Source of the DNA: Laetmonice hystrix
Taxonomy: Eukaryota
Assembly: GCA_965235115.1 (NCBI GenBank)
Contig: OZ249438.1
Location: forward strand, 20,088,001 to 20,152,000
Reading direction: 5' to 3'
Length of the DNA stretch: 64,000 bases
A model generated the notes under the pieces. It was not told where the DNA came from. It did no database searches and was given only the letters and a program-made list of their open reading frames with translations. Both the position numbers and the translations under genes were made by a program. Positions 25,866 through 59,800 of this stretch are shown in pieces (position 1 is the stretch's first letter; each line of letters starts with the position of its first letter).

Positions 25866-26101
25866 NNNNNNNNNNNNNNNNNNNNNNNNNNNNNNNNNNN
25901 NNNNNNNNNNNNNNNNNNNNNNNNNNNNNNNNNNNNNNNNNNNNNNNNNNNNNNNNNNNNNNNNNNNNNNNNNNNNNNNNNNNNNNNNNNNNNNNNNNNN
26001 NNNNNNNNNNNNNNNNNNNNNNNNNNNNNNNNNNNNNNNNNNNNNNNNNNNNNNNNNNNNNNNNNNNNNNNNNNNNNNNNNNNNNNNNNNNNNNNNNNNN
26101 N
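25866..26101. other. Assembly gap (N run)
   Basis: Run of N. Confidence 1.
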
Positions 26102-28473: not shown

Positions 28474-29798
28474 GGTAGCTCCAAGCCTGGGTTGAGGGGT
28501 GTCCCATGGGGGACAGACGGGAGCTCCGAGCCTGGGTTGAGGGGTGTCCCATGGGGGACAGACGGTAGCTCCGAGCACGGGTGTCCCATGGGGGACAGAC
28601 GGTAGCTCCGAGCCCGGGTTGAGGGGTGTCCCATGGGGGACAGACGGTAGCTCCGAGCCTGGGTTGAGGGGTGTCCCATGGGGGACAGACGGGAGCTCCG
28701 AGCCCGGGTTGAGGGGTGTCCCATGGGAGACAGACGGTAGCTCCGAGCACGGGTTGAGGGGTGTCCCATGGGGGACAGACGGTAGCTCCGAGCACGGGTT
28801 GAGGGGTGTCCCATGGGGGGCAGACGGGAGCTCCGAGCCTGGGTTGAGGGGCGTCCCATGGGGGACAGACGGGAGCTCCGAGCCCGGGTTGAGGGGTGTC
28901 CCATGGGGGACAGACGGTAGCTCCGAGCCTGGGTTGAGGGGTGTCCCATGGGAGACAGATGGTAGCTCCGAGCCCGGGTTGAGGGGTGTCCCATGGGGGA
29001 CAGACGGGAGCTCCGAGCCTGGGTTGAGGGGTGTCCCATGGGAGACAGATGGTAGCTCCGAGCCTGGGTTGAGGGGTGTCCCATGGGGGACAGACGGGAG
29101 CTCTGAGCCCGGGTTGAGGGGTGTCCCATGGGGGACAGACGGTAGCTCCGAGTCCGGGTTGAGGGGTGTCCCATGGGAGACAGACGGGAGCTCTGAGCCC
29201 GGGTTGAGGGGTGTCCCATGGGGGACAGACGGTAGCTCTGAACCCGGGTTGAGGGGGGACAGGACAGAAGGTGTCCCATGGGGGACAGACGGTAGCTCCG
29301 AGCATGGGTTGAGGGGTGTCCCATGCTATGATAGGAGACAGAAGGTAGCTCCGAGCACGGGTTGAGGGGTGTCCCATGCCATGATAGGAGACAGACGGTA
29401 GCTCCGAGCACGCGGGTTGAGGGGTGTCCCATGCTATGATAGGAGACAGACGGTAGCTCCGAGCACGGGTTGAGGGGTGTCCCATGCCATGATAGGAGAC
29501 AGACGGTAGCTCCGAGCACGGGTTGAGGGGTGTCCCATGCCATGATAGGAGACAGACGGTAGCTCCGAGCACGGGTTGAGGGGTGTCCCATGGGGGACAG
29601 ACGGGCGCTCCGAGCCTGGGTTGAGGGGTGTCCCATGGGGGACAGACGGTAGCTCCGAGCACGGGTTGAGGGGTGTCCCATACTATGATAGGAGACAGAC
29701 GGTAGCTCCGAGCACGGGTTGAGGGGTGTCCCATGCCATGATAGGAGACAGACGGTAGCTCCGAGCACGGGTTGAGGGGTGTCCCATGGGAGACAGAC
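28474..29798. repeat. GC-rich 45-bp minisatellite (about 28 units, with longer variants)
   Basis: Unit GGGTTGAGGGGTGTCCCATGGGGGACAGACGG(T/G)AGCTCCGAGC(C/A)(T/C); variant units carry ATGCTATGATAGGAG. Period 45 (28489 to 28534). Confidence 0.97.
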
Positions 29799-38503: not shown

Positions 38504-38660
38504 NNNNNNNNNNNNNNNNNNNNNNNNNNNNNNNNNNNNNNNNNNNNNNNNNNNNNNNNNNNNNNNNNNNNNNNNNNNNNNNNNNNNNNNNNNNNNNNNN
38601 NNNNNNNNNNNNNNNNNNNNNNNNNNNNNNNNNNNNNNNNNNNNNNNNNNNNNNNNNNNN
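38504..38660. other. Assembly gap (N run)
   Basis: Run of N. Confidence 1.
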
Positions 38661-39161
38661 GCATGTTAAAGAGGCTCTTCTTGTCAAAACCAACAAACGT
38701 GACTTTTCACGAGAATATTGAGTGTTTCTATAGATGGTAAAGACATAGATCTATATGTAAAACTATTGGCGCGATACCGTAGAGACGTATAACACAATTT
38801 CCACAAGATTCAGAAAATGTTTGACCGCTAGATGTAGTCGTATACGTGGCTGTGCCAGACGCTGTCATTCAAGAGGAGATGCGAGTGCCCTGATTAGCTA
38901 AGCGTTTGGTCGAATAGATTTAGACTCACTGCATCATCCATGCGAATTGGATTGAAGTCGGATGTCACAAGTTTGTTCCTGTAAGTACGTATTGACCACC
39001 TTGGGACACATGCAAAGTAAATAATTCATGTGTGAATTCGTCAATCTGATACACTGAAATGAGCCCCTTTAAAATGGTAGATCTAGGCATACTATCAGTA
39101 TTCAGGTTAGAGACAAAACCAATTTTACGAGACAATGGGCCGAGAAGAAGAGAGACGGATA

Positions 39162-39760
39162 TTTTTTTTTTTTTTTTTTTTTTTTTTTCAATTACCACTT
39201 TCAGGGATATACCCTGATCTTCCAAGTAGGTACATACAGTTACAAATATATACACATACAGGCAGATGTGCAAGTCAACAAAAAGTATCGGTGCAGCGAG
39301 TGCGGGGCAAATGACAATATTATACATAATGGCGATGAACATAATTTAGTATACATTTAGGTTATAACAGGCTATCGAAACGAAACAGAACATTCATTTG
39401 CGCAAAGCAAGTTTGAAAGAACGCTTGTCGGGTGAATGCTGAACAGAAGAGTCAAGAGCGCCCCATAGATGACATCCTCTGTAAAGAGGGCTACGCTTAA
39501 AAGCTTCACATCTGGGACGGTCAATTTTGAAAACTATTTTATTACTCCGAGATGGTCGTTCCCGTGAAAGTATATGTGACGGAATCAGGGAACGTTTATA
39601 CATAAGTGTGAGTAACTGGCGTTCGCGTCTTGACTCTAACGGTTCAACATTGGCATTCGTATGCAAGTCATAGACAGACATGTCACGCTGATTATATACA
39701 GGATGATTGAAATTATGATTCTATATAGGCCTGCATTCAGTGCTGCAAGTCTATCTATAC
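39162..39760 (-). mobile_element. 5'-truncated non-LTR retrotransposon (CR1/L2-like ORF2 C-terminus, 3' UTR and polyA tail)
   Basis: ORF 39681-39394 (LHTNANVEPLESRRERQLLTLMYK...RSPLYRGCHLWGAL...SFKLAL) resembles the post-RT C-terminal region of CR1/L2-clade ORF2 (L..L..RR...L..MYK; RS..YRG..LWN.L...FK). It is followed by a short UTR and a 27-nt polyA (T run 39162-39188 on +). Confidence 0.75.
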
Positions 39761-40540
39761 ACGTAATATGTTTGTTGTTGGTGCGGGCCCAGCAGCGGGC
39801 TTATGCTGTCCGACCTGGAGGTCCCTGCGATTCCTGTCGCAGGGGTCACATTTTGTCGGTAGATTCGCGTTACTTGGATCATTATGCATGACATACTGCC
39901 GGTCCAGCCTGAGTTTTACGACCAAAGTAGAATCGCCTGAGTTTCTGTTTACCATAGGAAGCTATACGTCATTACACGGAGCTGCCAAATGCCGCAACTT
40001 TAGGCGCAGCCCCTGAAGCCAGATGACACCCTACTACCCGTGACGGAGGAATCAATTGCACCCTGAGCAGCCCAATCGTACCACAATAATGACTCTGAGG
40101 GACGGCCAGGACGGGACCAACCGTACTATGGTCCCATCATTACATATACGGCGTACGCTTCCGTTCTGGGTCTGAAGACAAAAGGCAAACAAATCTCACG
40201 AACCATCGCCGCCAGCAAAACATTTGTTTATTATAGGGAGGATGCACAAGTTCGATGACCAATTTGTTTGTGGGTATTTGTTTAAGAAACTGGGGAATCG
40301 AATCGGTGTTGCCCACGGCTACACGGGCATTAGGCGATTTGTGGTGTGGGTAGAATAGCCAGACCGTAGGGCCTATGCGGCGAGTGACCAGGTATTTGGC
40401 TAAACTTGCACAATCCCTAGGATCCCAATCCTGGTGGCCTATATTGTTTTACATCAAATGCCATTCTATTCATGTCTTGGAAAGAACGTACAGGCGTGCA
40501 ACCCCCGCCCCTCTCCCACGTTCAAACACAACTATCTGTC

Positions 40541-40543
<3 letters not shown>

Positions 40544-40598
<55 letters not shown>
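40544..40598. repeat. (CT)n microsatellite
   Basis: About 27 perfect CT units. Confidence 0.95.
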
Positions 40599-40602
<4 letters not shown>

Positions 40603-43600
40603 AAGACCTAAGTAAAGATGGTATCGATGATTGATGTGTCAAACAAAGTTTTGTATTCAGACCTACAGTTCCGGATCTATATATTTATAGCAGCTACAGT
40701 TTCTGCCTAGGACACTTTCAATCAGATCGAAGGAACGGAGGGCACCTACAAGTTAGGCAAGCCTACCCCGCTCCTCCACACCAACTTCCAAATCTTACCA
40801 TATACATAGGAGAAGGCCTATTGCGGGCCATACTTCCAACTGTACGAACCAGCAAGTCTACTAGCTACCGGCATATACTGCTGGTCTCCATCCATCTTGA
40901 ACAATGGCCGCTGTGTAGCGCTCAGGTGGCCGCCGACCTGTTGAGCTGCCATGACCCATTGATAGACGATTGGCTCCAATGATAGGTTGGTACGGGGGGC
41001 GTGGTCGGGGTCCCTCATACAATCAAAGGGCCGCCAAGGGCCACCCCATCAGTATTGTGACGGGGTAGCACGTGCTCCTATAGATATACAGTGTCCCCGT
41101 AATAGAACGCTTCTCCCGGCTATTTGAGGCCCAAGGAACACTGTGTCCCCCATACAGTGTGTGTATATAAAGCTTTAGTCATCACTCAATGAATCTCATC
41201 TATGTTAAAATGATAGATAAATACAAGTATACCACAATCTACAAACATCCAATCGAATACGATAAGAAGGGCTCGAGGCAAGTATTCAATGGTGGTCATC
41301 TTATGTAGTCTTTGAGGCAATATTGGTTAAAATAATCTGTTACTGACGATTTCAGGGTGGATATTTTGTGCATATACCAGGCTTTACCTACAGCTGGGTT
41401 TATCCATCCTTGATAGACCCGGCAGAGATTATGTTCTGGTTCGAGCGAATACTTGGGATCTAGAAACTGCTTTCCGCTTTCAGATGTGCCGCGCTGCTTG
41501 CAAAAGGCTATCTATGTCTGTATATGAAAGCGGGAACTTTTTATGTCAATAAAGTGCCGTTACATTGTCATTTGGATAAACCCGCTTTTTGTCTTTTCCT
41601 GCAAACAGTTCAACAATGACTACGGATCTGATTTCGCCGCGCCACACAGAAGCGTTGACATACACTTGTGCGCAGTTTGCCAGGTAGTTTGGCTGGAGGC
41701 CGTTCGGCCGAGGAGAGGTGATCGCCCGGTTTCAGAGCGTCTTTGCTGCTGAGGACGTCAAAACTATATACGGTACGTCTTCAGTGGCTAAACTTTGGTT
41801 GTCCTGTAATGGACTGGTCCCCTGTACAAGTACCTGCCGGTCCACTCGAAGCTAACAACATGCCTTTCTTACTCATACAATCGCTTCGTTTTATAGCCAC
41901 AGTGCCGTGGTGGTAAGGCCACGCATGGCGGATTTAGGATTCGGTTTTTCCCACCGTTGGTTGGAGAAGGCGGTAAGAGGCATTGTGTTGGCATTGTGGG
42001 CCGGTGTGTACGCGGCCTCTGCCGCCGGGTGTACGGTTTCGCCGACCACCGGCCGGTCCCGTGTCGGATTACCCGGCACCTGCGGCCGCCCAACACCTGG
42101 CCGACCACCACCCGATCCGAATCACCAAAATGGAAAGACGCACTCTCACAACTTGTCGACATCGGTTCTACACATTGTCATGGGTCCCAAGATTGGAGTT
42201 TTTTTTCATGAACCGAAACCCAAGCGCATATCATCAGATACAAAGTTTTTTTAAACGAATTGTATAAAGGGGAAAATATAAGAACTATACTGTAGGACCT
42301 CGTCTCTTTCCCCTTCAGGTCCATTAACGTGTAATCTTGTCGCAAAGCTTCTCCTCTTTCAATAATCTTTGCCCCTAATATGGATGCATCACTTTTTTCT
42401 GGCATTCTTGCCGTCTTTCAGAAACTGAAACCCGATGCGACTGGAAATTGCCATAATCTGGGAGTGCGATGGTTCTCAAGGTGACCGCTGATCGGTTGGT
42501 ACTGACTCGTCCATTCAGGCCTCGCTCACGACATGCGCACGGTGCCCACCGCGACAGTTGGATGGACTTTAGATATGCCATAATTTAGCGAGTCTCTTCT
42601 TAACAACTCCAACAATTGGACCTGTCATGCAGGTAACAAGACTAAGTTGTTATTCATATTCATGAGCACACCTGCAGACGCTGCCGACGGAAGGCTGACC
42701 CCCACACCTGTGGAGGACACGGCCCCAGGGGGCAATCCTGCCATCCCTGGCGGCCGCTTACGGACAGGGGTTGAGAAAGCGGCGTGACCCACCAAATTAA
42801 CAGTGTCACTGTCCCCTCAACCCCCACCCCTTTACCCCACCCCCAACTATCGTCACCCGCCGCTCACTGACCAAACTACGGGTTCAAAGATACTCCACAC
42901 ATATTTGGAAAAACTTGAGAGTTTGTTCATCTCCGAAAACACAAATCTGAGGATATCATGCAGAAGTAGAGTCTACATGTATTCAGTATGCTGAAAATAT
43001 TATGGGATCCTGTCGTTCCTGTCAACTCTGCATGTGTAGAAATTTCAACATGTATTTGAAGAGAGTAGCGCCTTTGATAGTGGGTTTCCTATTGAAGGGA
43101 CACTGCATGAAGTTAAAGAGATTTAAGCATTTTGGCAAGAAAAATATACCTGTTATAATTTTCTCCTTACCTCCAACTTCATGACGTACTAACAAATAAT
43201 ATCAAAAGTCAATACTTGTTGCGGGTTTTTCAATATAAAATCGTCGCGATAATGTACAAAGCATACTGTAATCGAAATATTCTGATAATTAAGGCGAAGA
43301 TATCCATTTTCCCTGTATCCATGTAAAGAGGAATTCGAAGGGGAAACTAGATAACGTGCATGGTGTGTATAGGTTGTATGGGTAAAAAGTTATGGTTATC
43401 TGAACTCTTTCATGGGTGCAGTGAACTATGCAGTTTGCATGCGTTCAACGCAGTTCTCTCCATATTCCAAACATATTTTCCTAACTTCCAAGGTTACATA
43501 ACAGAACGTATTGCATTATTACTTTAAGAAAGTGGATACAGGCAATAAATGACACGTTATACGTTGCCTTTGTACATTATATTTTTGTAACCCTTACTTT

Positions 43601-46372
43601 TTTATTTGCAGTAGGCCATAGCGATTGATGAATAGTCTAGAGCTGTAGCATGACCTGGCAATATATGTTATACATGTTGCATGATATGCAACAATGCATG
43701 ATATCTTTTTCCTGATTGCCCAAGTCATGATTGCTTGGTTTTGGTAAGTCTTCAACACGACCTATACTGACCTGTTTTTATGCTAGATACAGTCTCACAG
43801 AGATCGTCCTATTCACAAGGCGAACAGCAAGAGTAGAAGCCAGAAAAACGTCCTGCAAGGTTTCTCCGTCGTCAAATGACACTTCGACTGTCGCGTAACG
43901 AGAAACGTAATTACTGTGAGGGCTGCATTTTGTCGCGACCACTCTAGAGTGATAAGTTGAATGACATAGGGCCATGGAAATTGCGCGTATCTCAAACGCA
44001 TACATTTCACAAATGCATTTTATTTTTCAAACTTTGAAATAACACTATCCATATCATTATAATAATATGCCTATATACACATGCCATGTATAATATAGCG
44101 TTGAAACATTTGTAAAACAGTTGATTGTATTGTAATTATACAGGCAATTGGAATTTTCCTCCTGCCACCATTAATGGAGGGGGGGGGGCTCCCCAGGCTA
44201 GCCTGAACCATGACGTATGACGACCCCACGCGCGCCGTATTTCTCCACTAATCCTACCCACAGTCAGTGTCTGAAGATGATAACAGTCTATATAGGGCAT
44301 TGTGTGTTTGCTGATGACAGCGATAAGAGCAGCAGATATCGGGGCAAACACACGACAACATTGCCCCAGACCGCCCCTTCACATCTAATTTGTGCCCGTT
44401 ATCAATGATCTCGGGCGATGTTTAGTTCCAAAGATCCTCGTCATTTCTTGCTGACGTCTGTATTTGATTACCCCCCCCCCCCACCCCGCCAGTTCCCCAA
44501 CTCATAACCACACCTTTCAGGTACATGACGTAAATTATTTACAAACAAGAATAAAAAGAAATGTGTTTGTCGTGATATCTACATTCTGGTGCTACATATC
44601 TTAACTAAGTAAATCATTGTTACCAACACTATTACACTCTTAAATATCTCAATTAAAAATATCAATTGGCATTGTTGATTTCATCAGATAATTTACACAG
44701 CCATAACATGGTCTATCAATAAAAAGGGCAAAACGTTATAAGGGAATTCTTTTTATAAAGTGGCGTTCTGATTATGGGTCATGAAGGAATTCATTCCGAT
44801 TAAGTTTACAGGTTTGAACTAAAAATACGCAGGTTGTCTGCAGGCGAAAAACTGGTGTTCCATTATAGCCAAAGTGTTATTTTTCAGTATATAGCAGTGC
44901 TGAGACTGTCAATGGTGAATCCCCGTGACCAGTTAAATCGGACGGCAGGCACAGCACTTGGGCCCCCGCAGAGCCTCAGTATCGAATCTATTCTGCGGCC
45001 GAATCTGGAGAAAATCAAAGCACCCCCCGTGTCACGGGGTCGCCGAGGGGCCTGTGGATGCTTAGACTGTTTCAGAAACTCAGTAGCAGGCGGGAGAGGA
45101 CCGCACCGCGACTCTTTCAGGTCTGGCCACGTGAGGCGGGCTTGTGAAATGGGGGAGAAAGGACTCTGGCAAGCCCTTTGACGGGGCTTAACTGGTGGAA
45201 GGGCGTCCTGCAGAGAGTGGTACTCAGCCGTATAACTGTCAGTTGTCAACACGCCGTCAAAAGCGCACGACACTTTAAATAGCCGTATTTGCTGTGCTAA
45301 GGAGTTACAGCATGTGATCCTCATAATGTTTCTCATCAAAAAAGGGGTTCGGACATGTCCATCCATTCCTTTACTGGATTCTCATTGCCGGGGTCAAAGG
45401 TTGTGCTCCCAAACACCCATCGGGCACCCGAAATGGACACCCAGGGCAGCTGCAATGCACGTGGCATTTTCTTGCTCTCGTGCGAACTCTTGTTTTACAA
45501 ATCTTCCAAGAGTGTTGTATGGTAGGTCAGACCACTTCATACCAAAAACCGGCTGAGATGCGACTGGTCCTCCACGCAGCTGAGGCAATATTTATCATGT
45601 TTATAGACCTGCCGTGAGTGCTTCCATAGCCCGCGGACGTTGGTTGCCTTCCTACGTCAGTCACGCGAGTAATCTGGCGAACACAGACAAGGATGACTGT
45701 ATTATAAGGCGAACTAAACAGAACTTACTGCGTGTTAAATGGATCCCTTCACAGATCCTTCCTATTGAATGTTGTCTGGGAGGAATGTTTTCAGTCTGGC
45801 AGGGAGTTCCATGCTGCCCCGACATCAATTCCGATCAGTCGAAATACATTGATATCATACTCTTCTTTTGAGTTTCTTCTTCCTTTTCTTCGTTTAAATG
45901 GAGTGAAGCATTCTTATTTGGTGGCAAACGTACCTTTACCTGCACGCGTAGGAGATGATTCCATGGTTTGTGACTGATTTACGGATTGACGTATAGACAT
46001 GACGGAACAACACGGGAAAGTGAGGATAAATGAAAAGCAAAACAAGAAACAAAATATATACTTTAAAAACACTCACACATACATAAGTAGGAATGGGTCG
46101 AGGAGAAATTGTAATATCAGATGAGGATTCTGTTAACCTAGTTCATTTTATTCTCAATAACATGCAGTTACATGCAGTAAACACCTTTTGTTTCTTGGTC
46201 ACTTGTGGTTCTACCGAATTTTCTCACTTCAAGACAAGGCTAACCATCGGCTACACATTTCCCTTCTTTAGATATTGTTTTATCATCCATTCAATGTATC
46301 ATTTTACTGTGTATCACTGGTCACAGCAACAAAAATCAATTACAAAACCTTAGGTTGTTCTGTACTTGTAAG

Positions 46373-46378
46373 TTTATT
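46373..46378 (-). promoter_or_regulatory. Candidate polyadenylation signal of the DapF-like gene
   Basis: AATAAA on the minus strand, 8 nt after the TGA stop at 46387-46389. Confidence 0.5.
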
Positions 46379-46386
46379 ATTATGCT

Positions 46387-47268
46387 TCACTTTTTAGAGT
46401 ATTTAGATTTAGGGTTTGCCAAATAAGCTTCGTAATTAACTTCCCCTTTAAATACCCTTTTTGCGGGTCCAATCAGATGGATGTTTTGAAATTCAGTTGT
46501 CCCTGTGCGTTCGAAGGAAACGGAAAGCTTTCCACCTTTACATATCACTTCCGTTCGTTGTACTTCCGGTTTCGATGACGTCTGCCATGGTTTGGTCGAC
46601 TCGTAAACCAAGGCTGAAGCCACGGATCCCGTACCACAAGCTAACGGCTCGTAATCTACTTTCGATTCCAGACTTCTAACACTCAACTGACCATCACTTT
46701 CAACTTGAATAAACATGACGTTCATTCCTCCGCTCGTTTCATACCTTGGATCCCGACTTATCCTAACACCTACTCCGGCAGTGTCGTAATCCCACAAATT
46801 CTCCACGAACGTCACATGACGTTCGTTGCCGACATCAATGAAATAATTCTCCTCGTCATATTTTTTTATTTCCCGAACACTGTTAAATTGAATGAAAACG
46901 TCCTCGGTCTCCTCGTCCACCCAGCCAACGTGCGGACCGTCTCTCGCCATGAAGTTAAACTTCTCTCCGACACGGTGAACTCCAAGGAAATGGGAAAAGG
47001 CAACGGCGCATCGAGATCCATTACCACACAGATACGGCCCCTTCACGCCTTCTTCACGGGTATAAACCATTTCAAAGTCACACTGCGGGTGTGCACGGAC
47101 CTCTAACACGCCGTCTGCCCCGACTCCAAAGTTTCTGTCACACAGCCACTGTATGAAAGCACGGTCGTCACTGTACTGGTCAAAGTGACCGTCGCGATTA
47201 TCAATCAGGATAAAGTCATTCCCCGCACCGTGGTACTTATAAAACGTGATATCTCCGGACAAAGCCAT
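46387..47268 (-). CDS. dapF: Diaminopimelate epimerase (DapF)-fold protein, 293 aa, intronless ORF, bacterial-type
   Basis: Full-length DapF motifs in order: FYKYHGAGNDFILIDNR, LCDRNFGVGADG, CGNGSRC (catalytic Cys 1), GN..HV.FV, G.NV.F, ACGTG (catalytic Cys 2), GGKL.V.F, L.GPA..VFKG. The overall layout recalls Bacteroidota DapF (inference, not searched). Confidence 0.92.
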   Translation of the reverse strand: MALSGDITFYKYHGAGNDFILIDNRDGHFDQYSDDRAFIQWLCDRNFGVGADGVLEVRAHPQCDFEMVYTREEGVKGPYLCGNGSRCAVAFSHFLGVHRVGEKFNFMARDGPHVGWVDEETEDVFIQFNSVREIKKYDEENYFIDVGNERHVTFVENLWDYDTAGVGVRISRDPRYETSGGMNVMFIQVESDGQLSVRSLESKVDYEPLACGTGSVASALVYESTKPWQTSSKPEVQRTEVICKGGKLSVSFERTGTTEFQNIHLIGPAKRVFKGEVNYEAYLANPKSKYSKK

Positions 47269-47277
47269 TCTGCAAAT

Positions 47278-47300
47278 CTGAAAGAGACGTAGCGGAAGTG
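47278..47300 (-). promoter_or_regulatory. Spliceosomal 3' splice acceptor upstream of the DapF-like ATG
   Basis: Minus strand reads ...CACTTCCGCTACGTCTCTTTCAG|ATTTGCAGA ATG: a pyrimidine tract plus CAG, 9 nt before the start codon. Confidence 0.6.
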
Positions 47301-47323
47301 TGAACTCGCAAAGAAAATACTAA

Positions 47324-47476
47324 NNNNNNNNNNNNNNNNNNNNNNNNNNNNNNNNNNNNNNNNNNNNNNNNNNNNNNNNNNNNNNNNNNNNNNNNNNNNN
47401 NNNNNNNNNNNNNNNNNNNNNNNNNNNNNNNNNNNNNNNNNNNNNNNNNNNNNNNNNNNNNNNNNNNNNNNNNNNN
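47324..47476. other. Assembly gap (N run), bordered by GA/GACA simple repeats
   Basis: Run of N, followed by AGAGAG/GACAGACA/GAGACA repeats to about 47545. Confidence 1.
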
Positions 47477-48308
47477 AGAGAGGCAGAGAGGGAGACAGAC
47501 AGACAGACCAACAGGGAGAGAGACAGAGACAGAGACAGAGACAGAGTAGGCCTACTGGGGGAGGCCAAGGCTAAATCTATTTGGCTGGTGTACCAATTTG
47601 GTCCTTCATCTAAATAATAATATTGAATTGGGAATACATATGGCATGGGGGCAGACCTCCGCGCATAAAGGACCAAGAGGAGCATAGGTCCTATGCATAG
47701 GGCCTATGCTTTATACCCTTTCCAACTTCAGTACCACAGTCCAATGGCTTGGCTTGCGGATAGTGTTTTATTACTTATACTGAAGGTGTCGCCACAAGCG
47801 GTACAACCACGGCAAACCATTGAATGGGGGGAATATTTGCTTCGCTCAGATTACACTAGACGGCAGTGCGGTAGTTAACTTCGCCAGCAAGGACGACACT
47901 CCATAAGCTATATACATGTATTAGATAAGGCCTGCCTCTAGACAATGGGATGTCGCCTCTTAGTTCGAATATATCATAAGAAAGTATAGACCCCCTATAC
48001 ATGGCCAATGTAAGATTACATTTCGTGATTTTGGTGAGCCTCAATAAACCAAAACACAAGACACTTAGACAGACACGGTAGCGTCCTACATCCATAAGGG
48101 ATCAAATAGGCCTAATATGATCATCATGCACGACAAGGGGCGGATCCAACAGGGAGGGTATAGGGCAGGTCTATCTATAGGGGGTGGGCTCTTTCTCGGA
48201 AAGCGATTAAACAAGTAACTGTCATCTAAGTGAGGCCAAATATTAAAACTGTAGGCCTACTGTGCATGCAGCCTAACTGACAAGTCTAAACAGGATATAA
48301 TACGCTAC

Positions 48309-48569
48309 CCCTGGCGGATCCAGGATTTCACTAAGAGGGGGGGGGGGCACAGAAAAGCAATTCATGATTGTTTGCATTAAAGCTGATGCTCTTGAATGAG
48401 AGTTTTAGAGGTATATGCCTACATATAGCTCGGGGTTTCCCTGAGACACACCGTCAGTGTTAAAATTAATTAAAAATGAGTAGGCTATAGCCGTGTAGGC
48501 CTATAATTAATGAAGCTAAAGGAGGCACGTGCCCCCTGTGCCCCCCCCCCCCCCCTGGATCCGCCTTTG
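48309..48569. mobile_element. About 260-bp MITE, copy 1 (GGCGGATCC TIR core, 5-bp TSD GCTAC)
   Basis: CCCTGGCGGATCCAGG...CCTGGATCCGCCTTTG flanked by GCTAC at 48304-48308 and 48570-48574; near-identical to 49415-49677. Confidence 0.85.
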
Positions 48570-49414
48570 GCTACATAGGCTACTAGGCCTACCTGTTATT
48601 GAGCAGACGCTGTCCCGTTATACAGAGACTGACCTCTACGAGCACAGAGGATCGACAGGTTGTCTCTGGGTGTTCAGAGATTTCTTATCGCTCATACAGA
48701 TAACAACCAATATTATAGACCCTGGGGCCGTTATTTTTCATCTTGTGTTATGGTTTCTCATTGACTGACTTCATTTGAAGGACCAATCACTCTGAAACAA
48801 GAGTTCAGTCTTAAGATTTGAATCTACAGTCTCGGTTTCCAAACTAAAAACCAGGACCAGGGCCGGGCTTAGTCTCCAATGATGGGATTACTGTTTAGGG
48901 CAGGGGGCTGTTCCGACACCTCTGACTCTGTGGCTTTGAAAGGTCTTCAGCACGTGACGTCAACACTTTTAACAATGACTCGAAGAACAGTTCTAAGTAG
49001 GCCTAAATAAGGATGCCTACCTGGAGACGTATACCAGAATCCCTTGGTCTATGCGTAGGGGGAGCTACAGGAATAGGCCTATTGGATTCTATGGGGTAGG
49101 CCGTGCGCGGCGGGGGGGGGGGTACTAAAAGTTAGACATATTTCTATCAATTCTAAGGGCGCAGGCTGTCTGCCAAAAATGGAACTTTTTCCAGGAAGTT
49201 TTTTAGGACTATGAGAGGAACTTTCCCTCCATATATTTAGCCAAGCCTACGCATCCGGGCCTATAGGCCCTACGGCTAGTTACACGTTACATCTACATCA
49301 AGTAGGAGCAATCCATATCAGGCCCATTTCCCGGCAGTCTGGCTGACCCTGACTGCCTGGCCCAGTTCGTGGAATATCTCTGGCGACCGGCTGGCATCGA
49401 AGGGCAAACGTTTG

Positions 49415-49677
49415 CACTGGCGGATCCAGGATTTCACTAAAGGGGGGGGGGGCACAGAAAAGCAATTCATGATTGTTTGCATTACTAATTAAAGCTCATG
49501 CTCTTGAATTAGATTTTTAGATGTATAGGCCTACATAATAGCTCGGGGTTTCCCTGAGATACACCGTCAGTGTTAAAATTAATTCAAAATAAGTAGGCTA
49601 TAGCCGTGTATAGGGCTAATTAGTGAAGCTAACGGAGGGGCACGTGTCCCCTGTGCCCCCCTCTGGATCCGCCTTTG
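49415..49677. mobile_element. About 260-bp MITE, copy 2
   Basis: Direct-orientation paralogue of 48309-48569 along its whole length (GGCGGATCCAGGATTTCACTAA...GGCACAGAAAAGCAATTCATGATTG...GGATCCGCCTTTG). Confidence 0.85.
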
Positions 49678-49979
49678 GAACTTTGTCTACCAGGTAAGTA
49701 GGTGCATTGTCGCCAGTAAATGTCCACTTTAGGCCAGTGGCAGCATAATTTGAAGGATGGACCAAGACTGACCTGAAAGCGTTGGATAGGTCTACCTTCG
49801 CCAGGTATGCTCCTTGTGACAGGTGGACAGTTTCCGGTTTAATTTCGCGACTGATGGCGGAGCAGTTAGAAGGTTATTGATCCGTGTCCTCCCTGCACAC
49901 TATCCGCCAACTAAAGTAAACAATTTCTCTCCCCGCCCCAGTTTGCTGACACACATTTACATTCACAGGGCTCGGAAAA

Positions 49980-53840: not shown

Positions 53841-56800
53841 TCAACTGCCCTCTCTCAGACAGTCCAACGCTCTCTGAATACGACTAACATCTGCCCTCAC
53901 TTTGGAAAGCTGCAATATAAATGGACACACATTCTGATCAATTTGAAGACTTTCATATTTTCAAAATGTTGCCTTTCTCATTTGATCATTTTTGGCGGTA
54001 CCATTCCCAATCTATCCTAGAGTGGTATACTCCTTGATATACTTGCTGTTCTTTCCTCGAGATGACAACAATTTCACTTACTTTCTCAACTTCGGTCATT
54101 TTGATCTGAGCAGGAATGGATGCACTGTCCTGTCGCTTAACCAAGCACCCAATCTCATCGTGAAGTTTGCTCAATCGTTTCTGCAGGCGGGTTATTTCAA
54201 CATCGAAGTCTAGAAGTCCCTGTAAAAAATATACTTCCAGTTATATCATAACAACACGCAGCCAAACGTATAATCGTTAAACATGTTAGTGCCACTTGAG
54301 ACCCAGAAAACTTTAACTGACAACTTTCAATCTTACCTCGAGTTTCAGGTGAAGCAGGAATTTAGGTGTCACAGGTACACTAACAAATCCTGTACGGACA
54401 GTCCGGCCCTTCCTGGTCAGGTCCTGTCCCATGGGGTCCTGTCCCATGTGGTCCTGTCCCATGGGGTCCTGTCCCATGGGGTCCTGTCCCATGTGGTCCT
54501 GTCCCATGGGGTCCTGTCCCATGGGGTCCTGTCCCATGTGGTCCTGTCCCACAGGGTCCTGTCCCACAGGGTCCTGGACCGCAGTGAGTTGACCCACACT
54601 GACAGTGGAACGTGTCAGAGTTTCGAGAAGCTCACGGTGGTGTTGGAGAGCTGATACGGTGGCGTCAGACTGCACTTCTAAGCACACTGAAAGACATACA
54701 CTCACTTATATGTCTTCTCGCTTCACAATAATGTGTCTTCTCGCTTCACAATAATATATCTTCTCGCTTCACAATAACAGCGGAAATACAAAGGGGTTAA
54801 ATCAATAACACAGAAAATTGGACAATAATATGAAAGTAATAGTATGTACAAAGATCTCCCATTCAATGATTGTTATATTGAAGTCCAAAGAAAACTCACT
54901 CACCCTCGAGTTGAGTCTTTGTGAGGCCAAAGTCTGCTTTGATGGAGAGGATACTGTTTACGGCAGAAGTGACTTCATTCATTTCTGTCTCGAGATCCAT
55001 ATCAAACCAAAGATACTAAAACATGGTAAAGCAATGATAATTGAATCATTTTTTGTCACTTCCATAGATTTACAACTACAGACCATTACAATTAGGCTTC
55101 AATGACAGAATGCCAGGCTTCCTGGGTGAGAATCACCAACTCAAACTATTTAAATGTCAAAATGTCAAAATATGCTGGACTGTGTCCAAGTCGTTTACCT
55201 GGTCAGGCCGTGGGTAAGGAGCTACCATGATACTAACAGGTTTGGTAGAGCCACCTGCTGGCAGCCGCTGGAACAACTCTTCTGTCACATATGGCATGAA
55301 TGGACTGAGCGCTCGGAGACCCGTGGACACACAGAGTAGGAGGACTGACTGCACCAGTGCTGCCCTCTCTCCGCCTTCTTGCAAAACTTTCTTACTGTAT
55401 TCCTGAAACAGAACCGGTTACACCATTGGAAACCACTCCTTGAAACCTGTATGAATCAAAACAATTATAAACTCACAAATAGAAACATGTGCCTAGTTAC
55501 CAGATAAATGCTGCAGAAGTCCCACCAGTACTGATGGAGGGCTTTGGTTACTGAGTTCAAGGTGTAGGTTTGGAAACCCTGCTCACACTGCTGCACGAGG
55601 TTTGAGGTCCGACTCAGCATCCACCGGTCGGTGTTGGTGGCACACGATGGCAGCTGACAAGAAACACAGGTCACCGTTAGTGCAGGATTTACTCAACCTT
55701 CCACAGGTCCTTATAACTTATTTTACAACAACGCCTTCTCTGGTTGACTTACGTTTTGCAGGTCTGATGGCACAAACTCTTTGGTCCAGTGTTGAAGGCA
55801 AAACCTGAAAGCCTGCCATATTTTGTTACAGAACCGTCGGTTGGCATCGATATGACTGACGTCTACATTGGTAAACTGACCTGTAACAAATGGGGGTACA
55901 ATCACTGGATACACTAAGATACATTCGATCTATCCAATGGATTATTCTATGGTCATTTAAAATGTGTTTCAATGACAGTCCTAAACATTTAATCCAGAAT
56001 AGCTGCCAGAGGCTGGGAGTGCTTGTTCAGTGTTTACTTTTATAGTTGTACGAGCAGAGGGTGAAGCGCAGAGCATCCACTCCACACTCTGGGATACCGA
56101 GTGGGAAGTCCTTCTTCTGTCCGGCAACAGCCTTTGTAATTTCTGACTTGCTCAGTCCACTTGACGAAACCTTTGCTTGCAAGCCCTAGAAAGAAAGACA
56201 CAAATTTAGAACTCACTTTTGCTGTAGAAATAAAATAAAAAACTAGGGCTTGCCTTTATTCTGCTACCGTACTCATGTTTACAGTTGTAAAAATAATACC
56301 ACTACCAGTACTGAGAAAACTTAAATAAGAACGTTGTTTTTTATGAAGGAATGTGTTGGAATAACAAATTTCTTTACCTCCAGTGAAATTCCATGGATAA
56401 TATCGAGAGGATCAATGATATTGCCCAGTGATTTACTCATCTTTCGACCATAGCGATCCTGCAGGATGCTGTGAAGTAGCACCTACTGGGCAATAAAATA
56501 ATCATAATACATAAATCACAATAAACTGTTATTGTCTCTAGACCATGATCAGCAATAATGTTTTCATCCAAATCTGTCCATCGATAGGTGTGTAACATGG
56601 TATTTTAATACAAAAGTGACAAAGCTATGGGTGACCTGTTTAAACGGTAGTTGTCCCGTAAGGTGCTGGCCAAGCATGACCATCCGGGCGACCCAGAAAA
56701 ACAGGATATCACTTGCTGTCTCCAGTAGGTCCGTTGGATAGAATCTTTTAATGTCTGATGTCTGAAACAGACGTAAAAAAATACGATATAAGTTTAGTTT

Positions 56801-59800
56801 CGTTGCTTTTTTTTTTTTTTTTAGGTGGGAGGGGAATTGGGTTCTTTTTATAAGAACCTCAGCATACACCTTGGAAATGTTTACATTAAGTTACACTCAG
56901 ATCATGTGAGCTATACCAAACCTGGAGGTAAACCAATCAATAATTATCACAGGTTGATATTATCATACAGGAAACCTTTCTATTGGGTACACACCTGTTC
57001 TGGCCATCCCAGTGCAGAGAAAGGCACAAGGGCAGAGGAAAACCAGGTGTCAAGAACGTCCTCATCTGAAACATGCAATTATATAAATATATGCAGACTG
57101 GCATCAAGGAGATTGTCATGAGATTCTTACCCTAGTTTCACCTTTCTCTGACGATATAACCATGTATGTAGGATCCTTGCTTACCCTGAGTGAGTGCTAG
57201 GTGTTCGCTGGGTATGCCGAGTTTGGCACTCGCCTTCCGGAGTGCCTCAGCCTCTGACCGCCCACTGACCCACTGTTCTCCATCCTTCTCCACGTCCTGT
57301 CACATACATATTATGTAAAACTGACTTTTTTCTCAGACTGCCAATATGGACAGATAGGTTTATTCTACGAATACTGAGCCGGTAAAATTTCGTTAGCTTA
57401 TCTATGAGGACATGTGACTTTATTACAAGGTAAAACTGACCTTTGATGACTTGAGATTGACCTTGAAGGCTGGAATACGATGACCCCACCACAGCTGACG
57501 AGACACACACCAGGCTCTGAAAGGACATTTTACCAATCATACACCGCTGTGTGTACAGACCGTGGCCACCCCCTGAATGATATTACTCACATACATACAT
57601 TCAAATATAGCTCTCACAAACGACAAATTCTTGTAATGTCTTCAAGATAGAGACGAAACCAACATGCAAACATCAGCTGATGTAAGACTTACTTGCTATT
57701 TGTAAGCCACTGGCACCAAAGTTTGTCATACTGTGGGGGAACCAGTTCAAGGCATCCAGATTTTACTGCCTAGAAAAGAGTAACTATAGGTCATCGAAGG
57801 CGACTAGAATTGGCATCTGCTAAACAGATGTATTTGTTCTCACAAGCTTACACTCAAAGTTTAAATGAATGAAGTTCACATACCTCTTTGGCCTGTTCCA
57901 TCATATCTTCACAGTCCACATACCACTGTTCCTTCAGGAGGGGCTCAATTATATCACCTGTTCGACTGAAAAAGTAAAGTAATTAAATGTTTTAAGAATT
58001 CTCTTCTGAATATATTTGTCAGTAAGGAAATACTCTGCTCTCTCACACAAGGAGCTCATTTCCTTACCTGCACTGTGGTAGTACCATGCCATGTTCAACA
58101 TCCCCTCGCAGCAGTTCCCTCGACTGGAGAAAATCTCGGACGAGCTGTCGTGCATTGAACCTCTTCACGCCCTGAGAATCCAATGACCAGTGTTAGGGTT
58201 TCATAATGTTATTCTTCAAATACAATGTAATTGTGTCTTGTCATAGCACTTAGTTTTCTATTTTTAAATGTGAAAAGTAAGGTAACCATAAAAACTGTTT
58301 CATTAATAACTATGAAAAGAAAACTGGACAACTTCGTTCAGACCAATCAAGGTACCAGTACTAAACATTACAAATGTCCAAGTTTACAATAAATTCCACA
58401 GTCAAAACCTACCAGAAACTGCTCAGGCACATTGATCATACAACCATCCTCACTAATGACATGAACCACCGGGAGGCTGTGTCTCTGACCAACCTCATAG
58501 TCAGTCTGATCATGCGCCGGTGTGATCTTCACAGCTCCTGATGGCAACCAAACCACCAACATATACTACCGAATCTACCAATATCATCTCGAAAAATACC
58601 ATCTGTAAGTACTGGTAATTATATTGTAATCTGTGTATAACTGTGTGAACAAACTTGATGGTTATTACCTGTTCCAAACTTTCTGTCCACAAACTCGTCA
58701 CAGATAATGGGCATTGTTGCTCCAGAGATGGGATGCTGGACAACGCAACCATGAAGATGGCTGAATCTTGTGTCCTCAGGATGTACTGCCACAGCAACGT
58801 CCCCAAGCATGGTCTCTAGGCGGGTCGTCGCCACGACAACCTCCTCATCTGAAGTCATTTCAGCATTACATTCTTAGACTAGTTCTGTCAGTAGTATAGA
58901 AGCTGAGAATACGGTGACAACATATACACTACAGAGAATTTCAGACTGTTGGGGTAACTATTTTTTTAACAGCAGAGAGACTAAGAATATAGCACCTACC
59001 TGACCCTATAACAGGATAGGCAAACGAAGTGAGCTGGCCAAATGTTACAGGTTTCTCATAGCCAGGAACTCTCACCTCAGTTTTACCCTCAACTGGCACT
59101 GACTCAACCTATATTAAACAAAACCTCATCGCATTGAGTTGGTGTTGCACATTAGATCACTAATAAATATTTGCCAGAAAAACTGTTATACTTTTTCATA
59201 GTTATGCTCCTTAAGAACCTGTATAGGGCCTATGTGAAAAAGTCAAAATTTATGAAATATTATTAAAAAAATGGAATAGTTCAATAATTCATAGTTCATC
59301 TAAAATACTGATATGGTTTTCTGAGATGTACTCACCTCTATGTCTGAGATAGCCGACTTGAGGGCACATGACCAGTTTACAAGCCTCATGCTGCGATATA
59401 TCAATCCTTCATCATGTAAACGTACAAAGGCTTCAGTGACAGCCTTACTGTGCATCTGCAAGAAAACGGTCCTCAACTCCAACCTTCACTGACTGGGTCT
59501 ATGACCTCAGGCAATCAAGGATATACAAGATAAACATCAATAAAGAAAGCCCACCTACACGGTGAAGATACAAGTCTGAAGCGTAACATGCAGATGACAA
59601 TGATAAATTTGTCGGTGAAAAAAATTGTCAAATTATAAAAATGACAAGGAAGAAAATTAATTATGTAGTTACAATGGTGAAGTTGAATTTTATAAGGGAG
59701 AAAACTCACTGGATCGAGTGTGAAACAGTCCCGTGACCAATCAAGTGAGGAGCCAAGCTTTTTCATCTGGTTGTATATGATGTCTCCTTTCCTACAAAAC

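What the first reader, a model, noticed from the sequence alone, without database searches (positions are those of the whole stretch)
46387..47268. Bacterial-type DapF gene embedded in an animal chromosome: candidate horizontal gene transfer
Seen: an intact, intronless 293-aa ORF with all DapF-family motifs, lying between intron-rich animal genes (BMP2/4, GM2A, VARS2). It is on a gap-free contig (38661-47323) that also holds a polyA-tailed LINE fragment and a (CT)n microsatellite, which argues against a bacterial contaminant contig. No neighbouring bacterial operon genes are visible. Established: DapF works in the bacterial/plant DAP-lysine pathway and in peptidoglycan meso-DAP supply, and animals generally have neither. 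Inference: horizontal acquisition, with a Bacteroidota-like layout (N-terminal FYKY.G.GNDF..IDNR, GGKL.VSF, C-terminal GPA..VFKG). Whether relatives already carry annotated orthologues cannot be judged here.
Basis: partly seen in the sequence, partly recalled or inferred. Interest (0 to 1): 0.85.

Follow-up and report, generated by a model that had tools for sequence, protein, structure and literature searches.

The report
Domesticated bacterial DapF-like animal gene
An animal chromosome carries an expressed, spliced gene descended from a bacterial (Bacteroidota-type) diaminopimelate epimerase; it belongs to an old, multi-copy family also found in molluscs, and its substrate pocket has changed although the animal has no lysine/DAP pathway.

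Summary
The 293-aa ORF at 46387-47268 (-) is real. It scores above the curated DapF cut-off, folds as DapF (pLDDT 93.5) and keeps both catalytic cysteines.

It is not a contaminant:
- Its k-mer depth equals that of the animal flank in three DNA runs.
- A transcriptome-like run joins it through a canonical GT-AG 5'-UTR intron (47278-49772, spanning the assembly gap) to an exon 2.5 kb upstream.
- The genome holds two more intact paralogues on other chromosomes.
- An orthologue in another animal genome has a spliceosomal intron inside its CDS.

About 25 animal-context sequences form one clade (UFBoot 99). Named members are Gigantopelta aegis, Lottia gigantea and the chiton Liolophura. The clade groups with Bacteroidota-type DapF against other phyla (98). 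An AU test cannot tell nested from sister (p = 0.56).

lysA, dapB and dapL are not found. Three positions invariant in 108 bacterial DapFs are replaced here and in two orthologues (N64R, H159R, R209S).

Best reading: an anciently transferred DapF, now a PLP-independent racemase/epimerase with altered specificity. Mollusc members are database-annotated, but I found no paper on them. The scan's only earlier notes are re-reads of this same stretch, none on other DNA.

The parts
46387..47268 (-). Coding sequence of the DapF-like protein (293 aa plus stop), uninterrupted
   Evidence: ORF list and sequence. PF01678 and TIGR00652 above their cut-offs. AF2 model pLDDT 93.5 with DapF as the top PDB fold match.
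47026..47028 (-). Codon of catalytic Cys81 (E. coli/H. influenzae Cys73) in the motif CGNGSRC
   Evidence: Alignment to E. coli DapF and 108 bacterial DapFs. Read directly from the sequence.
46636..46638 (-). Codon of catalytic Cys211 (E. coli Cys217) in the motif ACGTGS
   Evidence: Alignment. Read directly from the sequence.
46133..47277 (-). Exon 2 as seen in the transcriptome-like run X4: 9-nt 5' UTR, the CDS, and about 254 nt of 3' UTR
   Evidence: X4 contigs cover 46133-47284 at depth ~55 and nothing of 42000-46093. The lower limit is approximate because a unitig boundary lies at 46133 in all runs.
47278..49772 (-). 5'-UTR spliceosomal intron (2,495 nt, includes the N gap 47324-47476). 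Donor CAG|GTCAGT, acceptor TCTCTTTCAG|A.
   Evidence: The X4 contig leaves the genome at 47284 and continues with 28 nt that match only 49780-49807. Splice signals were read. The DNA-run contigs read straight through.
49773..49807 (-). 3' end of exon 1 (non-coding); the transcript start is not determined
   Evidence: 28 loose letters plus 7 shared letters of the X4 contig.
46147..46152 (-). AATAAA hexamer, candidate polyadenylation signal 14 nt upstream of where X4 coverage ends
   Evidence: Sequence and the end of X4 coverage. This is an inference; no poly(A) reads were seen.

Best explanation
Origin and gene structure. The gene is a genuine, transcribed nuclear gene of a bilaterian animal. 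It descends from a bacterial diaminopimelate epimerase of the type found in Bacteroidota. The transfer was old. The gene has since duplicated into a family with three intact paralogues in this genome (C3, C8, C29). Relatives occur in gastropods, a chiton and several unnamed animal genomes. It has acquired eukaryotic gene architecture: a spliced 5'-UTR intron here and a coding-sequence intron in an orthologue.

Protein. It keeps the two-domain DapF fold. It also keeps the two catalytic cysteines (C81, C211) and the residues that hold the reacting alpha-amino-acid centre (N17, N83, T213). It therefore most likely still works as a cofactor-independent, two-base racemase/epimerase.

Function. The animal lacks lysA, dapB and dapL, so the enzyme cannot serve lysine synthesis. 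The residues that clamp the distal end of diaminopimelate are rearranged in this copy and its orthologues: N64 to R71, R209 to S202, H159 to R150.

Inferred and not shown: the substrate has shifted. The pocket stays polar and gains positive charge, so the substrate is probably another acidic or dicarboxylic amino acid, or a DAP-like compound derived from bacterial cell walls.
For: Family and fold:
- TIGR00652 scores 131.5 bits against a cut-off of 114.65.
- The AF2 model has pLDDT 93.5 and pTM 0.91.
- Its best PDB matches are DapFs and the DapF-fold O-ureidoserine racemase, TM 0.72-0.79.

Integration and expression:
- The ORF contig's depth equals the flank's in three DNA-scale runs: 44.1 vs 41.8, 62.7 vs 55.1, and 42.6 vs 29-51.
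- Run X4 covers only the gene. It joins 47277 to 49773 across canonical GT-AG signals.
- The genome is chromosome-scale, 627 Mb in 35 sequences. It holds three intact DapF-like ORFs.
- The other two paralogues lie beside BTB-Kelch and dual-specificity phosphatase genes.
- Orthologue L001 has a 907-nt GT-AG phase-2 intron that restores a full 294-aa product.

Phylogeny:
- The animal clade has UFBoot 99 / SH-aLRT 98.
- It lies inside a 98-supported Bacteroidota-type clade, set against 11 DapFs of other phyla.
- Its immediate unlabelled neighbours P0205 and P0173 sit in bacterial operon-like contexts.
- Named members are Liolophura japonica, Gigantopelta aegis and Lottia gigantea.

Selection:
- Against L001, dN is 0.37 while dS is saturated.
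- The chiton tandem pair gives dN/dS 0.27-0.33.

No pathway:
- lysA gives only a 37-bit exon-sized hit.
- dapB gives no hit.
- DapL gives only 25.8 bits.

Pocket:
- In 108 bacterial DapFs, N11, N64, C73, N75, H159, N190, E208 and R209 are invariant. C217 is C in 107 of 108.
- The window copy, P0001 and L001 share R64 and R159. Position 209 is S in the window copy and P0001, and A in L001.
- The roles of these residues are taken from PMC8225329.
- That paper also shows that a DapF homologue with a substituted distal pocket racemises a different amino acid.
Against: - No enzymatic data exist.
- N190 and E208 are kept, and position 157 is Asn as in E. coli. The positive charge has moved from 209 to 64 rather than being lost. 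DAP itself therefore cannot be excluded as a substrate.
- H159, invariant in bacteria, is replaced, which could impair catalysis.
- X4's library type is not on record. Calling it RNA rests on its coverage pattern and the exact GT-AG joint.
- All four runs come from one sample and one study.
- The AU test leaves nested versus sister to Bacteroidota open.
- No named choanoflagellate, plant or other eukaryotic DapF could be placed in the tree. Their absence from the clade is inferred from ranking only.
- The host species is not identified.
Confidence: 0.7

Rival explanations
1. It is still a canonical diaminopimelate epimerase. It acts on free DAP released from ingested or resident bacteria, for scavenging, detoxification or modulation of DAP-type peptidoglycan signals.
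For: It scores above the DapF equivalog cut-off. The catalytic Cys pair, N11, N75, N190 and E208 are kept, and position 157 is Asn as in E. coli. About half of the animal clade, including the Gigantopelta and Lottia proteins, keeps the full canonical signature. So DAP epimerisation may be the family's ancestral animal function.
Against: N64, H159 and R209 are invariant in 108 bacterial DapFs. All three are replaced in this copy and its two orthologues. No lysA, dapB or dapL exists to use the product. This genome has no canonical paralogue at all.
Confidence: 0.17
2. It is a catalytically dead or non-enzymatic descendant, either a binding protein (pseudoenzyme) or a gene drifting towards loss.
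For: H159 is replaced. Sister paralogue C8 has lost catalytic Cys73, with Gly also present in its orthologue P0134. C29 is highly divergent at 54 bits.
Against: The ORF is intact in three species at 55-69% identity, with dS saturated and dN 0.37. Both catalytic Cys motifs and the alpha-site residues are conserved. The gene is transcribed and spliced. The fold model is confident.
Confidence: 0.1
3. It was inherited vertically from an early eukaryotic or holozoan ancestor and lost in most animals, rather than transferred from bacteria into an animal lineage.
For: Choanoflagellates have dapF and other DAP-pathway genes, and the same paper reports that candidate HGTs of amino-acid metabolism have orthologues in sponges and cnidarians (PMC7971027). 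The AU test allows the animal clade to sit outside the sampled Bacteroidota.
Against: No named non-mollusc eukaryote appears among the best 120 hits of either the single-sequence or the clade-profile search, while hundreds of Bacteroidota do. Arabidopsis DapF scores 77 bits against about 200 for Bacteroidota. The union with Bacteroidota-type DapF against five other bacterial groups has support 98. Named members are all molluscs.
Confidence: 0.03
4. It is a bacterial contaminant contig or an assembly mis-join.
For: The ATG lies only 55 nt from an assembly gap. The coding sequence has no intron.
Against: Depth equals the flank's. A spliced transcript bridges the gap to an upstream exon. There are three chromosomal paralogues in eukaryotic neighbourhoods. 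Orthologues lie on 0.3-81 Mb animal contigs, and one has a coding-sequence intron. GC3 is close to that of a host exon.
Confidence: 0.01

Closest known systems
Bacteroidota diaminopimelate epimerase (DapF, TIGR00652 / PF01678)
   Same: Same fold, length class and catalytic Cys pair. 38-43% identity. Nearest relatives by sequence search, language-model features and tree.
   Different: The gene sits on an animal chromosome with a spliced 5'-UTR intron. There is no DAP pathway around it or elsewhere in the genome. N64, H159 and R209, invariant in 108 bacterial sequences, are replaced. It has a 15-aa C-terminal tail shared with its orthologues.
Mollusc 'diaminopimelate epimerase-like' genes (Gigantopelta aegis RefSeq; Lottia gigantea LOTGIDRAFT_162386; Liolophura japonica tandem pair)
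   Same: Same animal clade (UFBoot 99), chromosomal, intact ORFs.
   Different: They belong to different sub-lineages. The Gigantopelta and Lottia proteins keep the canonical DapF active-site signature. The window copy and the chiton pair do not. I found no paper discussing any of them.
Horizontally acquired dapF of sap-feeding hemipterans (whitefly Bemisia tabaci, mealybug Planococcus citri)
   Same: A bacterial dapF fixed and expressed in an animal nuclear genome.
   Different: The hemipteran genes come from Enterobacterales and Alphaproteobacteria. They complete symbiont lysine synthesis together with acquired lysA and dapB (PMC4943190; PMC8659303, listed). Here the donor type is Bacteroidota, no partner genes exist, and the family has duplicated and diverged.
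DapF-fold racemases with retargeted pockets: PddB (2,4-diaminobutyrate racemase), DcsC (O-ureidoserine racemase, PDB 7vdy), CntK (histidine racemase, PDB 6jis)
   Same: Two-Cys, PLP-independent chemistry on the DapF scaffold with the distal-site residues substituted. DcsC is as close structurally as true DapFs, TM 0.75-0.78.
   Different: Those are bacterial enzymes of secondary metabolism with known substrates. The substitutions here (R64, R159, S209) are different, and the substrate is unknown.

Membership tests
DapF (diaminopimelate epimerase, TIGR00652 equivalog) | Full-length HMM score above the curated cut-off | tested here: met
   131.5 bits against 114.65, residues 7-277 on profile positions 1-268. 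PF01678 at 89.3 bits against 34.7.
DapF (diaminopimelate epimerase, TIGR00652 equivalog) | Two-domain pseudo-symmetric DapF fold | tested here: met
   AF2 pLDDT 93.5, pTM 0.91. Top Foldseek PDB hits are 5ha4, 8qzy, 2q9h and 9mro, E about 1e-23.
DapF (diaminopimelate epimerase, TIGR00652 equivalog) | Catalytic cysteine pair (Cys73/Cys217) at the N-termini of the two active-site helices | tested here: met
   C81 in CGNGSRC and C211 in ACGTGS.
DapF (diaminopimelate epimerase, TIGR00652 equivalog) | Residues binding the reacting alpha centre (Asn11, Asn75, Ser/Thr219) | tested here: met
   N17, N83 and T213 are present.
DapF (diaminopimelate epimerase, TIGR00652 equivalog) | Distal-site residues binding the second carboxylate and amine of DAP (Asn64, Asn157, Asn190, Arg209, Glu208) | tested here: not met
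   N64 is R71 and R209 is S202. N190 (N183) and E208 (E201) are kept. Position 157 is Asn. N64 and R209 are invariant in 108 bacterial DapFs. Residue roles are from PMC8225329.
DapF (diaminopimelate epimerase, TIGR00652 equivalog) | His159, invariant in the bacterial DapFs compared | tested here: not met
   It is R150 in the window copy, P0001 and L001.
DapF (diaminopimelate epimerase, TIGR00652 equivalog) | Works within a DAP/lysine or peptidoglycan pathway (lysA, dapB, dapL/dapD present) | tested here: not met
   In the whole 627-Mb genome, lysA gives only a 37.6-bit exon-sized hit, dapB gives none, and DapL gives only 25.8 bits. dapD and dapE were not searched.
DapF (diaminopimelate epimerase, TIGR00652 equivalog) | LL-DAP to meso-DAP epimerase activity | not testable with these tools
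   Needs an enzyme assay.
Bacterium-to-animal horizontally transferred gene | Physically part of the host chromosome | tested here: met
   Depth parity with the flank in three runs. The transcript links it across the gap to an upstream exon. Paralogues lie on the 32-Mb and 22-Mb sequences C8 and C29.
Bacterium-to-animal horizontally transferred gene | Eukaryotic gene features and expression | tested here: met
   GT-AG 5'-UTR intron here. GT-AG coding-sequence intron in L001. The X4 coverage pattern. Caveat: X4's library type is not on record.
Bacterium-to-animal horizontally transferred gene | Phylogeny groups it with one bacterial lineage to the exclusion of others and of other eukaryotes | tested here: met
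   98 support for the union with Bacteroidota-type DapF against 11 sequences of Pseudomonadota, Bacillota and Actinomycetota. Other eukaryotes were excluded by ranking only.
Bacterium-to-animal horizontally transferred gene | Nested inside the donor lineage's diversity | tested here: inconclusive
   The free trees nest it, among Cytophagales and near Flavobacteriales. Backbone support is about 80, and the AU test does not reject a sister position (p = 0.558).

The most novel reading that the evidence does not exclude
A single ancient transfer of a Bacteroidota DapF into an early mollusc (or wider lophotrochozoan) ancestor founded an animal-specific family of cofactor-independent amino-acid racemases. 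Its paralogues have since specialised. Some remain DAP epimerases acting on bacterial cell-wall DAP. The lineage of this gene (R64/R159/S209) is retargeted to another, probably acidic, amino acid. That would give these animals a PLP-independent route to D-amino acids or to processing of peptidoglycan fragments.
Probability: 0.3. Interest if true: 0.8.

Novelty: new variant of a known kind. Interest (0 to 1): 0.6.

Why it matters
Functional bacterial-to-animal gene transfers are few. The known dapF cases are all in sap-feeding insects, where the gene plugs a gap in a symbiont's lysine pathway.

Here a DapF of different origin has persisted in animal chromosomes, apparently since before gastropods and chitons diverged. 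It has multiplied, gained introns and been remodelled at its substrate pocket, all without any DAP pathway.

This makes it a tractable case of what an animal does with an orphan bacterial enzyme. It is also a candidate new source of D-amino acids, or a DAP-handling activity, in marine invertebrates. D-amino acids are abundant in these animals, and the routes known so far depend on PLP (this last point is from my own knowledge, not tested here).

It also shows that database labels such as 'diaminopimelate epimerase-like' in mollusc annotations hide at least three functionally distinct sub-lineages.

Tried and rejected
- Contamination or mis-join: rejected.
- Rooting with E. coli alone: its long branch was pulled to the animal clade. 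I discarded that tree and rebuilt it with 11 outgroups from the plasmid collection.
- Two GTDB genomes labelled Janthinobacterium and Bifidobacteriaceae were tried as sources of outgroup DapFs. Each holds only the Bacteroidota-type gene, so they are mislabelled or mis-binned and gave no outgroup.
- 'Relatives' sampling around a Cyclobacterium genome gave unlabelled genomes only. One extraction from it, L090, had a 7-unit branch and was dropped.
- Flank synteny between the window and orthologue locus L001: none within +-10 kb apart from a low-complexity repeat.
- dN/dS between orthologues: dS is saturated, so only a qualitative statement is possible.
- The RNA search found no run on record as RNA. 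Expression rests on run X4's behaviour.
- The context of P0178, which lies inside the animal clade, could not be looked up. DNA for P0001 and P0126 was not retrievable.
- Literature: no paper links diaminopimelate epimerase with molluscs or Gigantopelta. The metazoan HGT compendium's tables are not held.
- The host species could not be named. The best named BMP2/4 hits are about 50% identical and spread over several phyla.
- LINE identity of the poly-T region: no RT/EN domain was found.

Full report
THE OBSERVATION

The minus strand of 46387-47268 carries an uninterrupted ATG-to-TAA frame of 293 codons. It matches Pfam DAP_epimerase (2.6e-25). It also matches the NCBIfam DapF equivalog TIGR00652 over its full length, at 131.5 bits against a curated cut-off of 114.65. 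Seventeen solved DapF-family chains match by sequence.

An AlphaFold2 model built on a 23-sequence alignment is confident (pLDDT 93.5, pTM 0.91). Its best PDB neighbours are DapFs of Acinetobacter, Pseudomonas, Haemophilus and a cyanobacterium. The O-ureidoserine racemase DcsC is equally close, with TM 0.72-0.79.

The window's three N runs are at 25866-26101, 38504-38660 and 47324-47476. The ORF's contig (38661-47323) also holds a 27-nt T run and a (CT)27 repeat.

The neighbourhood is animal. A two-exon BMP2/4 gene lies at 11546-12544 and 21944-22594. A class-I aminoacyl-tRNA synthetase exon lies at 56567-56869. GM2A and the LINE identity of the poly-T region were not verified.

IS IT PART OF THE ANIMAL GENOME?

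Four independent lines say yes.

1. Logan contigs of three genome-scale runs give the ORF contig the same k-mer depth as the 4.1-kb flank: 44.1 vs 41.8, 62.7 vs 55.1, and 42.6 vs 29-51.

2. A fourth run, X4, has only 58 Mb of contigs. It covers 46133-47284 at depth ~55 and nothing of 42000-46093. Its contig leaves the genome upstream of the ATG and continues with 28 letters found only at 49780-49807.
   - A 7-nt string (CTTTCAG) is shared by both sides. Once that is resolved, exon 1 ends at 49773 (...CAG).
   - The intron runs 49772-47278, from GTCAGT to TCTCTTTCAG. Exon 2 starts at 47277, 9 nt before the ATG.
   - The DNA-run contigs read straight through. X4 therefore behaves as cDNA, although its library type is not on record.
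   - This spliced junction also ties the two assembly contigs together across the N gap without touching the gap's letters.

3. The genome (627 Mb, 35 sequences; the window is C3:20,088,001-20,152,000) holds two more intact DapF-like frames, at C8:16.39 Mb and C29:19.29 Mb. They lie near a dual-specificity phosphatase and a thioredoxin exon, and near a BTB-BACK-Kelch gene, respectively.

4. The closest database relatives sit on large, ORF-poor contigs with eukaryotic neighbours such as a hAT transposase, MIF4G, PML_C and a B-box/NHL gene. In one of them (L001, 55% identity) the coding sequence is split by a 907-nt phase-2 GT-AG intron with a polypyrimidine tract. Splicing restores a 294-aa protein.

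WHERE DOES IT COME FROM?

- Sequence search of 5.8 billion proteins gives two animal-context hits (69% and 55%), then hundreds of Bacteroidota DapFs at 38-43%.
- An exhaustive HMMER scan gives the same picture.
- The best 80 matches among 185,579 species genomes are all Bacteroidota-type. Two carry other labels but hold only this DapF type.
- Language-model and structural neighbours in the ESM Atlas are Bacteroidota.

A first ML tree put 11 animal-context sequences in one clade (SH-aLRT 98) among Cytophagales. Adding all 150 top representatives enlarged the clade to about 25.

With E. coli as the sole outgroup, its long branch was attracted to the animal clade. I therefore fetched 11 DapFs of Gamma-, Beta- and Alphaproteobacteria, Bacillota and Actinomycetota. 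In the resulting tree (LG+C20+F+G4):
- The outgroups separate from a Bacteroidota-type clade of 77 sequences (SH-aLRT 98).
- That clade contains the animal clade, which has UFBoot 99 / SH-aLRT 98 in the careful search.
- The nearest unlabelled outgroups checked are in bacterial operon-like contexts.

The backbone inside the Bacteroidota-type clade is weak. An AU test does not reject a tree in which all bacterial members form a clade excluding the animals (p = 0.558). The firm statement is 'closest to Bacteroidota-type DapF'. The donor order, and nested versus sister, remain open.

HOW OLD AND HOW WIDE?

A profile of the animal clade retrieved named members: 'diaminopimelate epimerase-like' of the vent snail Gigantopelta aegis (on an 81.6-Mb chromosome) and LOTGIDRAFT_162386 of Lottia gigantea. 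P0153 lies with a tandem paralogue on a 31-Mb chromosome of assembly GCA_032854445, the chiton Liolophura japonica.

Each of this genome's three paralogues pairs with a different set of sequences from other genomes: C3 with P0001 and L001, C8 with P0134, C29 with P0155. Each pairing has support 99-100. The duplications therefore predate those species splits.

I could not name the host. Its best named BMP2/4 hits are about 50% identical across several phyla. That all named family members are molluscs makes a mollusc of an unannotated class a reasonable guess, but this is inference.

No named non-mollusc eukaryote appears in the top 120 of either search. Arabidopsis DapF scores 77 bits.

WHAT DOES IT DO?

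The genome lacks the pathway DapF normally serves. lysA gives only a 37.6-bit exon-sized hit, dapB gives nothing, and DapL gives 25.8 bits.

I aligned E. coli DapF with the whole set and read the positions whose roles in H. influenzae DapF are summarised in PMC8225329.
- In 108 bacterial sequences N11, N64, C73, N75, H159, N190, E208 and R209 are invariant. C217 is C in 107 of 108.
- About half of the animal clade, including the Gigantopelta and Lottia proteins, keeps this signature.
- This gene keeps N11, C73, N75, N190, E208 and C217. It has R at 64, R at 159 and S at 209. P0001 is the same, and L001 has A at 209.
- The C8 paralogue and its orthologue have Gly in place of catalytic Cys73.
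- C29 is changed at most positions.
- So this genome has no canonical DapF at all.

The C3 lineage is under constraint. It shows 55-69% identity across three genomes, with dN 0.37 and saturated dS. The chiton pair gives dN/dS about 0.3. In the laid contigs the ORF piece differs from the assembly at 3 of 961 positions. The flank differs at 46 of 4,163 in run X1 and 25 in run X2.

There is precedent for retargeting. PddB, DcsC and CntK are DapF-fold, two-Cys racemases whose distal pockets are substituted and which act on other amino acids.

My reading is that the protein remains a PLP-independent two-base racemase/epimerase. The clamp for the distal end of the substrate has been rebuilt, with the positive charge moved from 209 to 64 and a second one added at 159. 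This points to a changed substrate that is probably still acidic or dicarboxylic. That last step is inference, and DAP itself is not excluded.

COMPARISON WITH WHAT IS KNOWN

Animal dapF transfers are documented in whitefly (Enterobacterales donor) and mealybug (alphaproteobacterial donor). There they act with co-acquired lysA and dapB in symbiont lysine synthesis (PMC4943190; PMC8659303). A prokaryote-derived dapF is also reported in the choanoflagellate Salpingoeca rosetta (PMC7971027).

The present family differs in donor type, recipient phylum, lack of pathway partners, paralogue expansion and pocket remodelling. Its mollusc members are auto-annotated in RefSeq and UniProt. I found no paper that discusses them, though the searchable library is incomplete.

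I classify it as a new variant of a known kind, with interest 0.6. The origin and integration are solid, the family-level picture appears undescribed, and the biochemical novelty is plausible but untested.

Noticed in passing
G000:C8:16394524-16395336 (L002 1465-2343): An intact 292-aa DapF-like paralogue scoring 159 bits on TIGR00652. The first catalytic cysteine is replaced by Gly (FGGNAGRC), while H159, N190, E208, R209 and C217 are kept. The same Gly is in its orthologue P0134 (46% identity). It is either a conserved single-base enzyme or a pseudoenzyme.
   Followed up: partly
G000:C29:19288621-19289385 (L004 1483-2337): A third, very divergent intact paralogue (54 bits, below the DapF cut-off). 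Both Cys are kept but N11, N64, N190, E208 and R209 are all changed. It pairs with P0155 and lies about 6 kb from a BTB-BACK-Kelch gene.
   Followed up: partly
window 46325-46362 and 46133-46267: Contigs of all four runs differ from the assembly in the 3' UTR. A 38-nt stretch is replaced by TT, and there is a length difference in a short tandem duplication (joint 46267 to 46133). These are probably allelic or assembly-collapse differences.
   Followed up: no
window 49349-49411 and 49685-49816; L126 (G000:C13:16412332-16415359) 1492-1684: The end of exon 1, its splice donor and part of the intron have a ~195-nt near-copy (92-98% identity) on chromosome C13. There the two pieces are adjacent. 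It is a short duplicated fragment or small repeat of unknown meaning.
   Followed up: partly
L123 8001-8837 and 11075-11914 (Liolophura japonica CM072731.1): The chiton carries two tandem DapF-like genes 2.2 kb apart. They are 70.6% identical with dN/dS about 0.3. For the first copy (P0153) the mapped positions read R64, A159, V190 and C209. The second copy shares the ECGV motif at 208-209, and its other positions were not mapped.
   Followed up: partly
L137 (Parabacteroides distasonis record NZ_OY725754.1): The Parabacteroides DapF, which lies next to an LL-DAP aminotransferase gene, groups with Bacillus thuringiensis (SH-aLRT 92) among the non-Bacteroidota outgroups rather than with the other Bacteroidota. 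So Bacteroidota carry at least two DapF types.
   Followed up: no
L051 and L063 (GTDB genomes labelled Bifidobacteriaceae and Janthinobacterium lividum): Both MAGs contain a single DapF, and it is of the Bacteroidota type. The record labels or bins are probably wrong.
   Followed up: partly
window 28352-29768: Long ORFs (460 and 441 aa on the minus strand, 273 aa on the plus strand) overlap one another and have no Pfam match. They may be a repeat, low-complexity coding sequence or an unannotated gene.
   Followed up: no
window 54425-54568; L001 217-285: A short internally repeated translated motif is shared between the window and the orthologue locus L001 (72-78% over 22-23 aa, several registers). 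It looks like a simple repeat rather than synteny.
   Followed up: no
window 46387-47268 vs 38661-46386: CpG observed/expected is 1.28 in the ORF against 0.83 in the rest of its contig. GC content is similar (46.7% vs 44.3%), and GC3 (0.48) is near that of the BMP exon (0.55).
   Followed up: no
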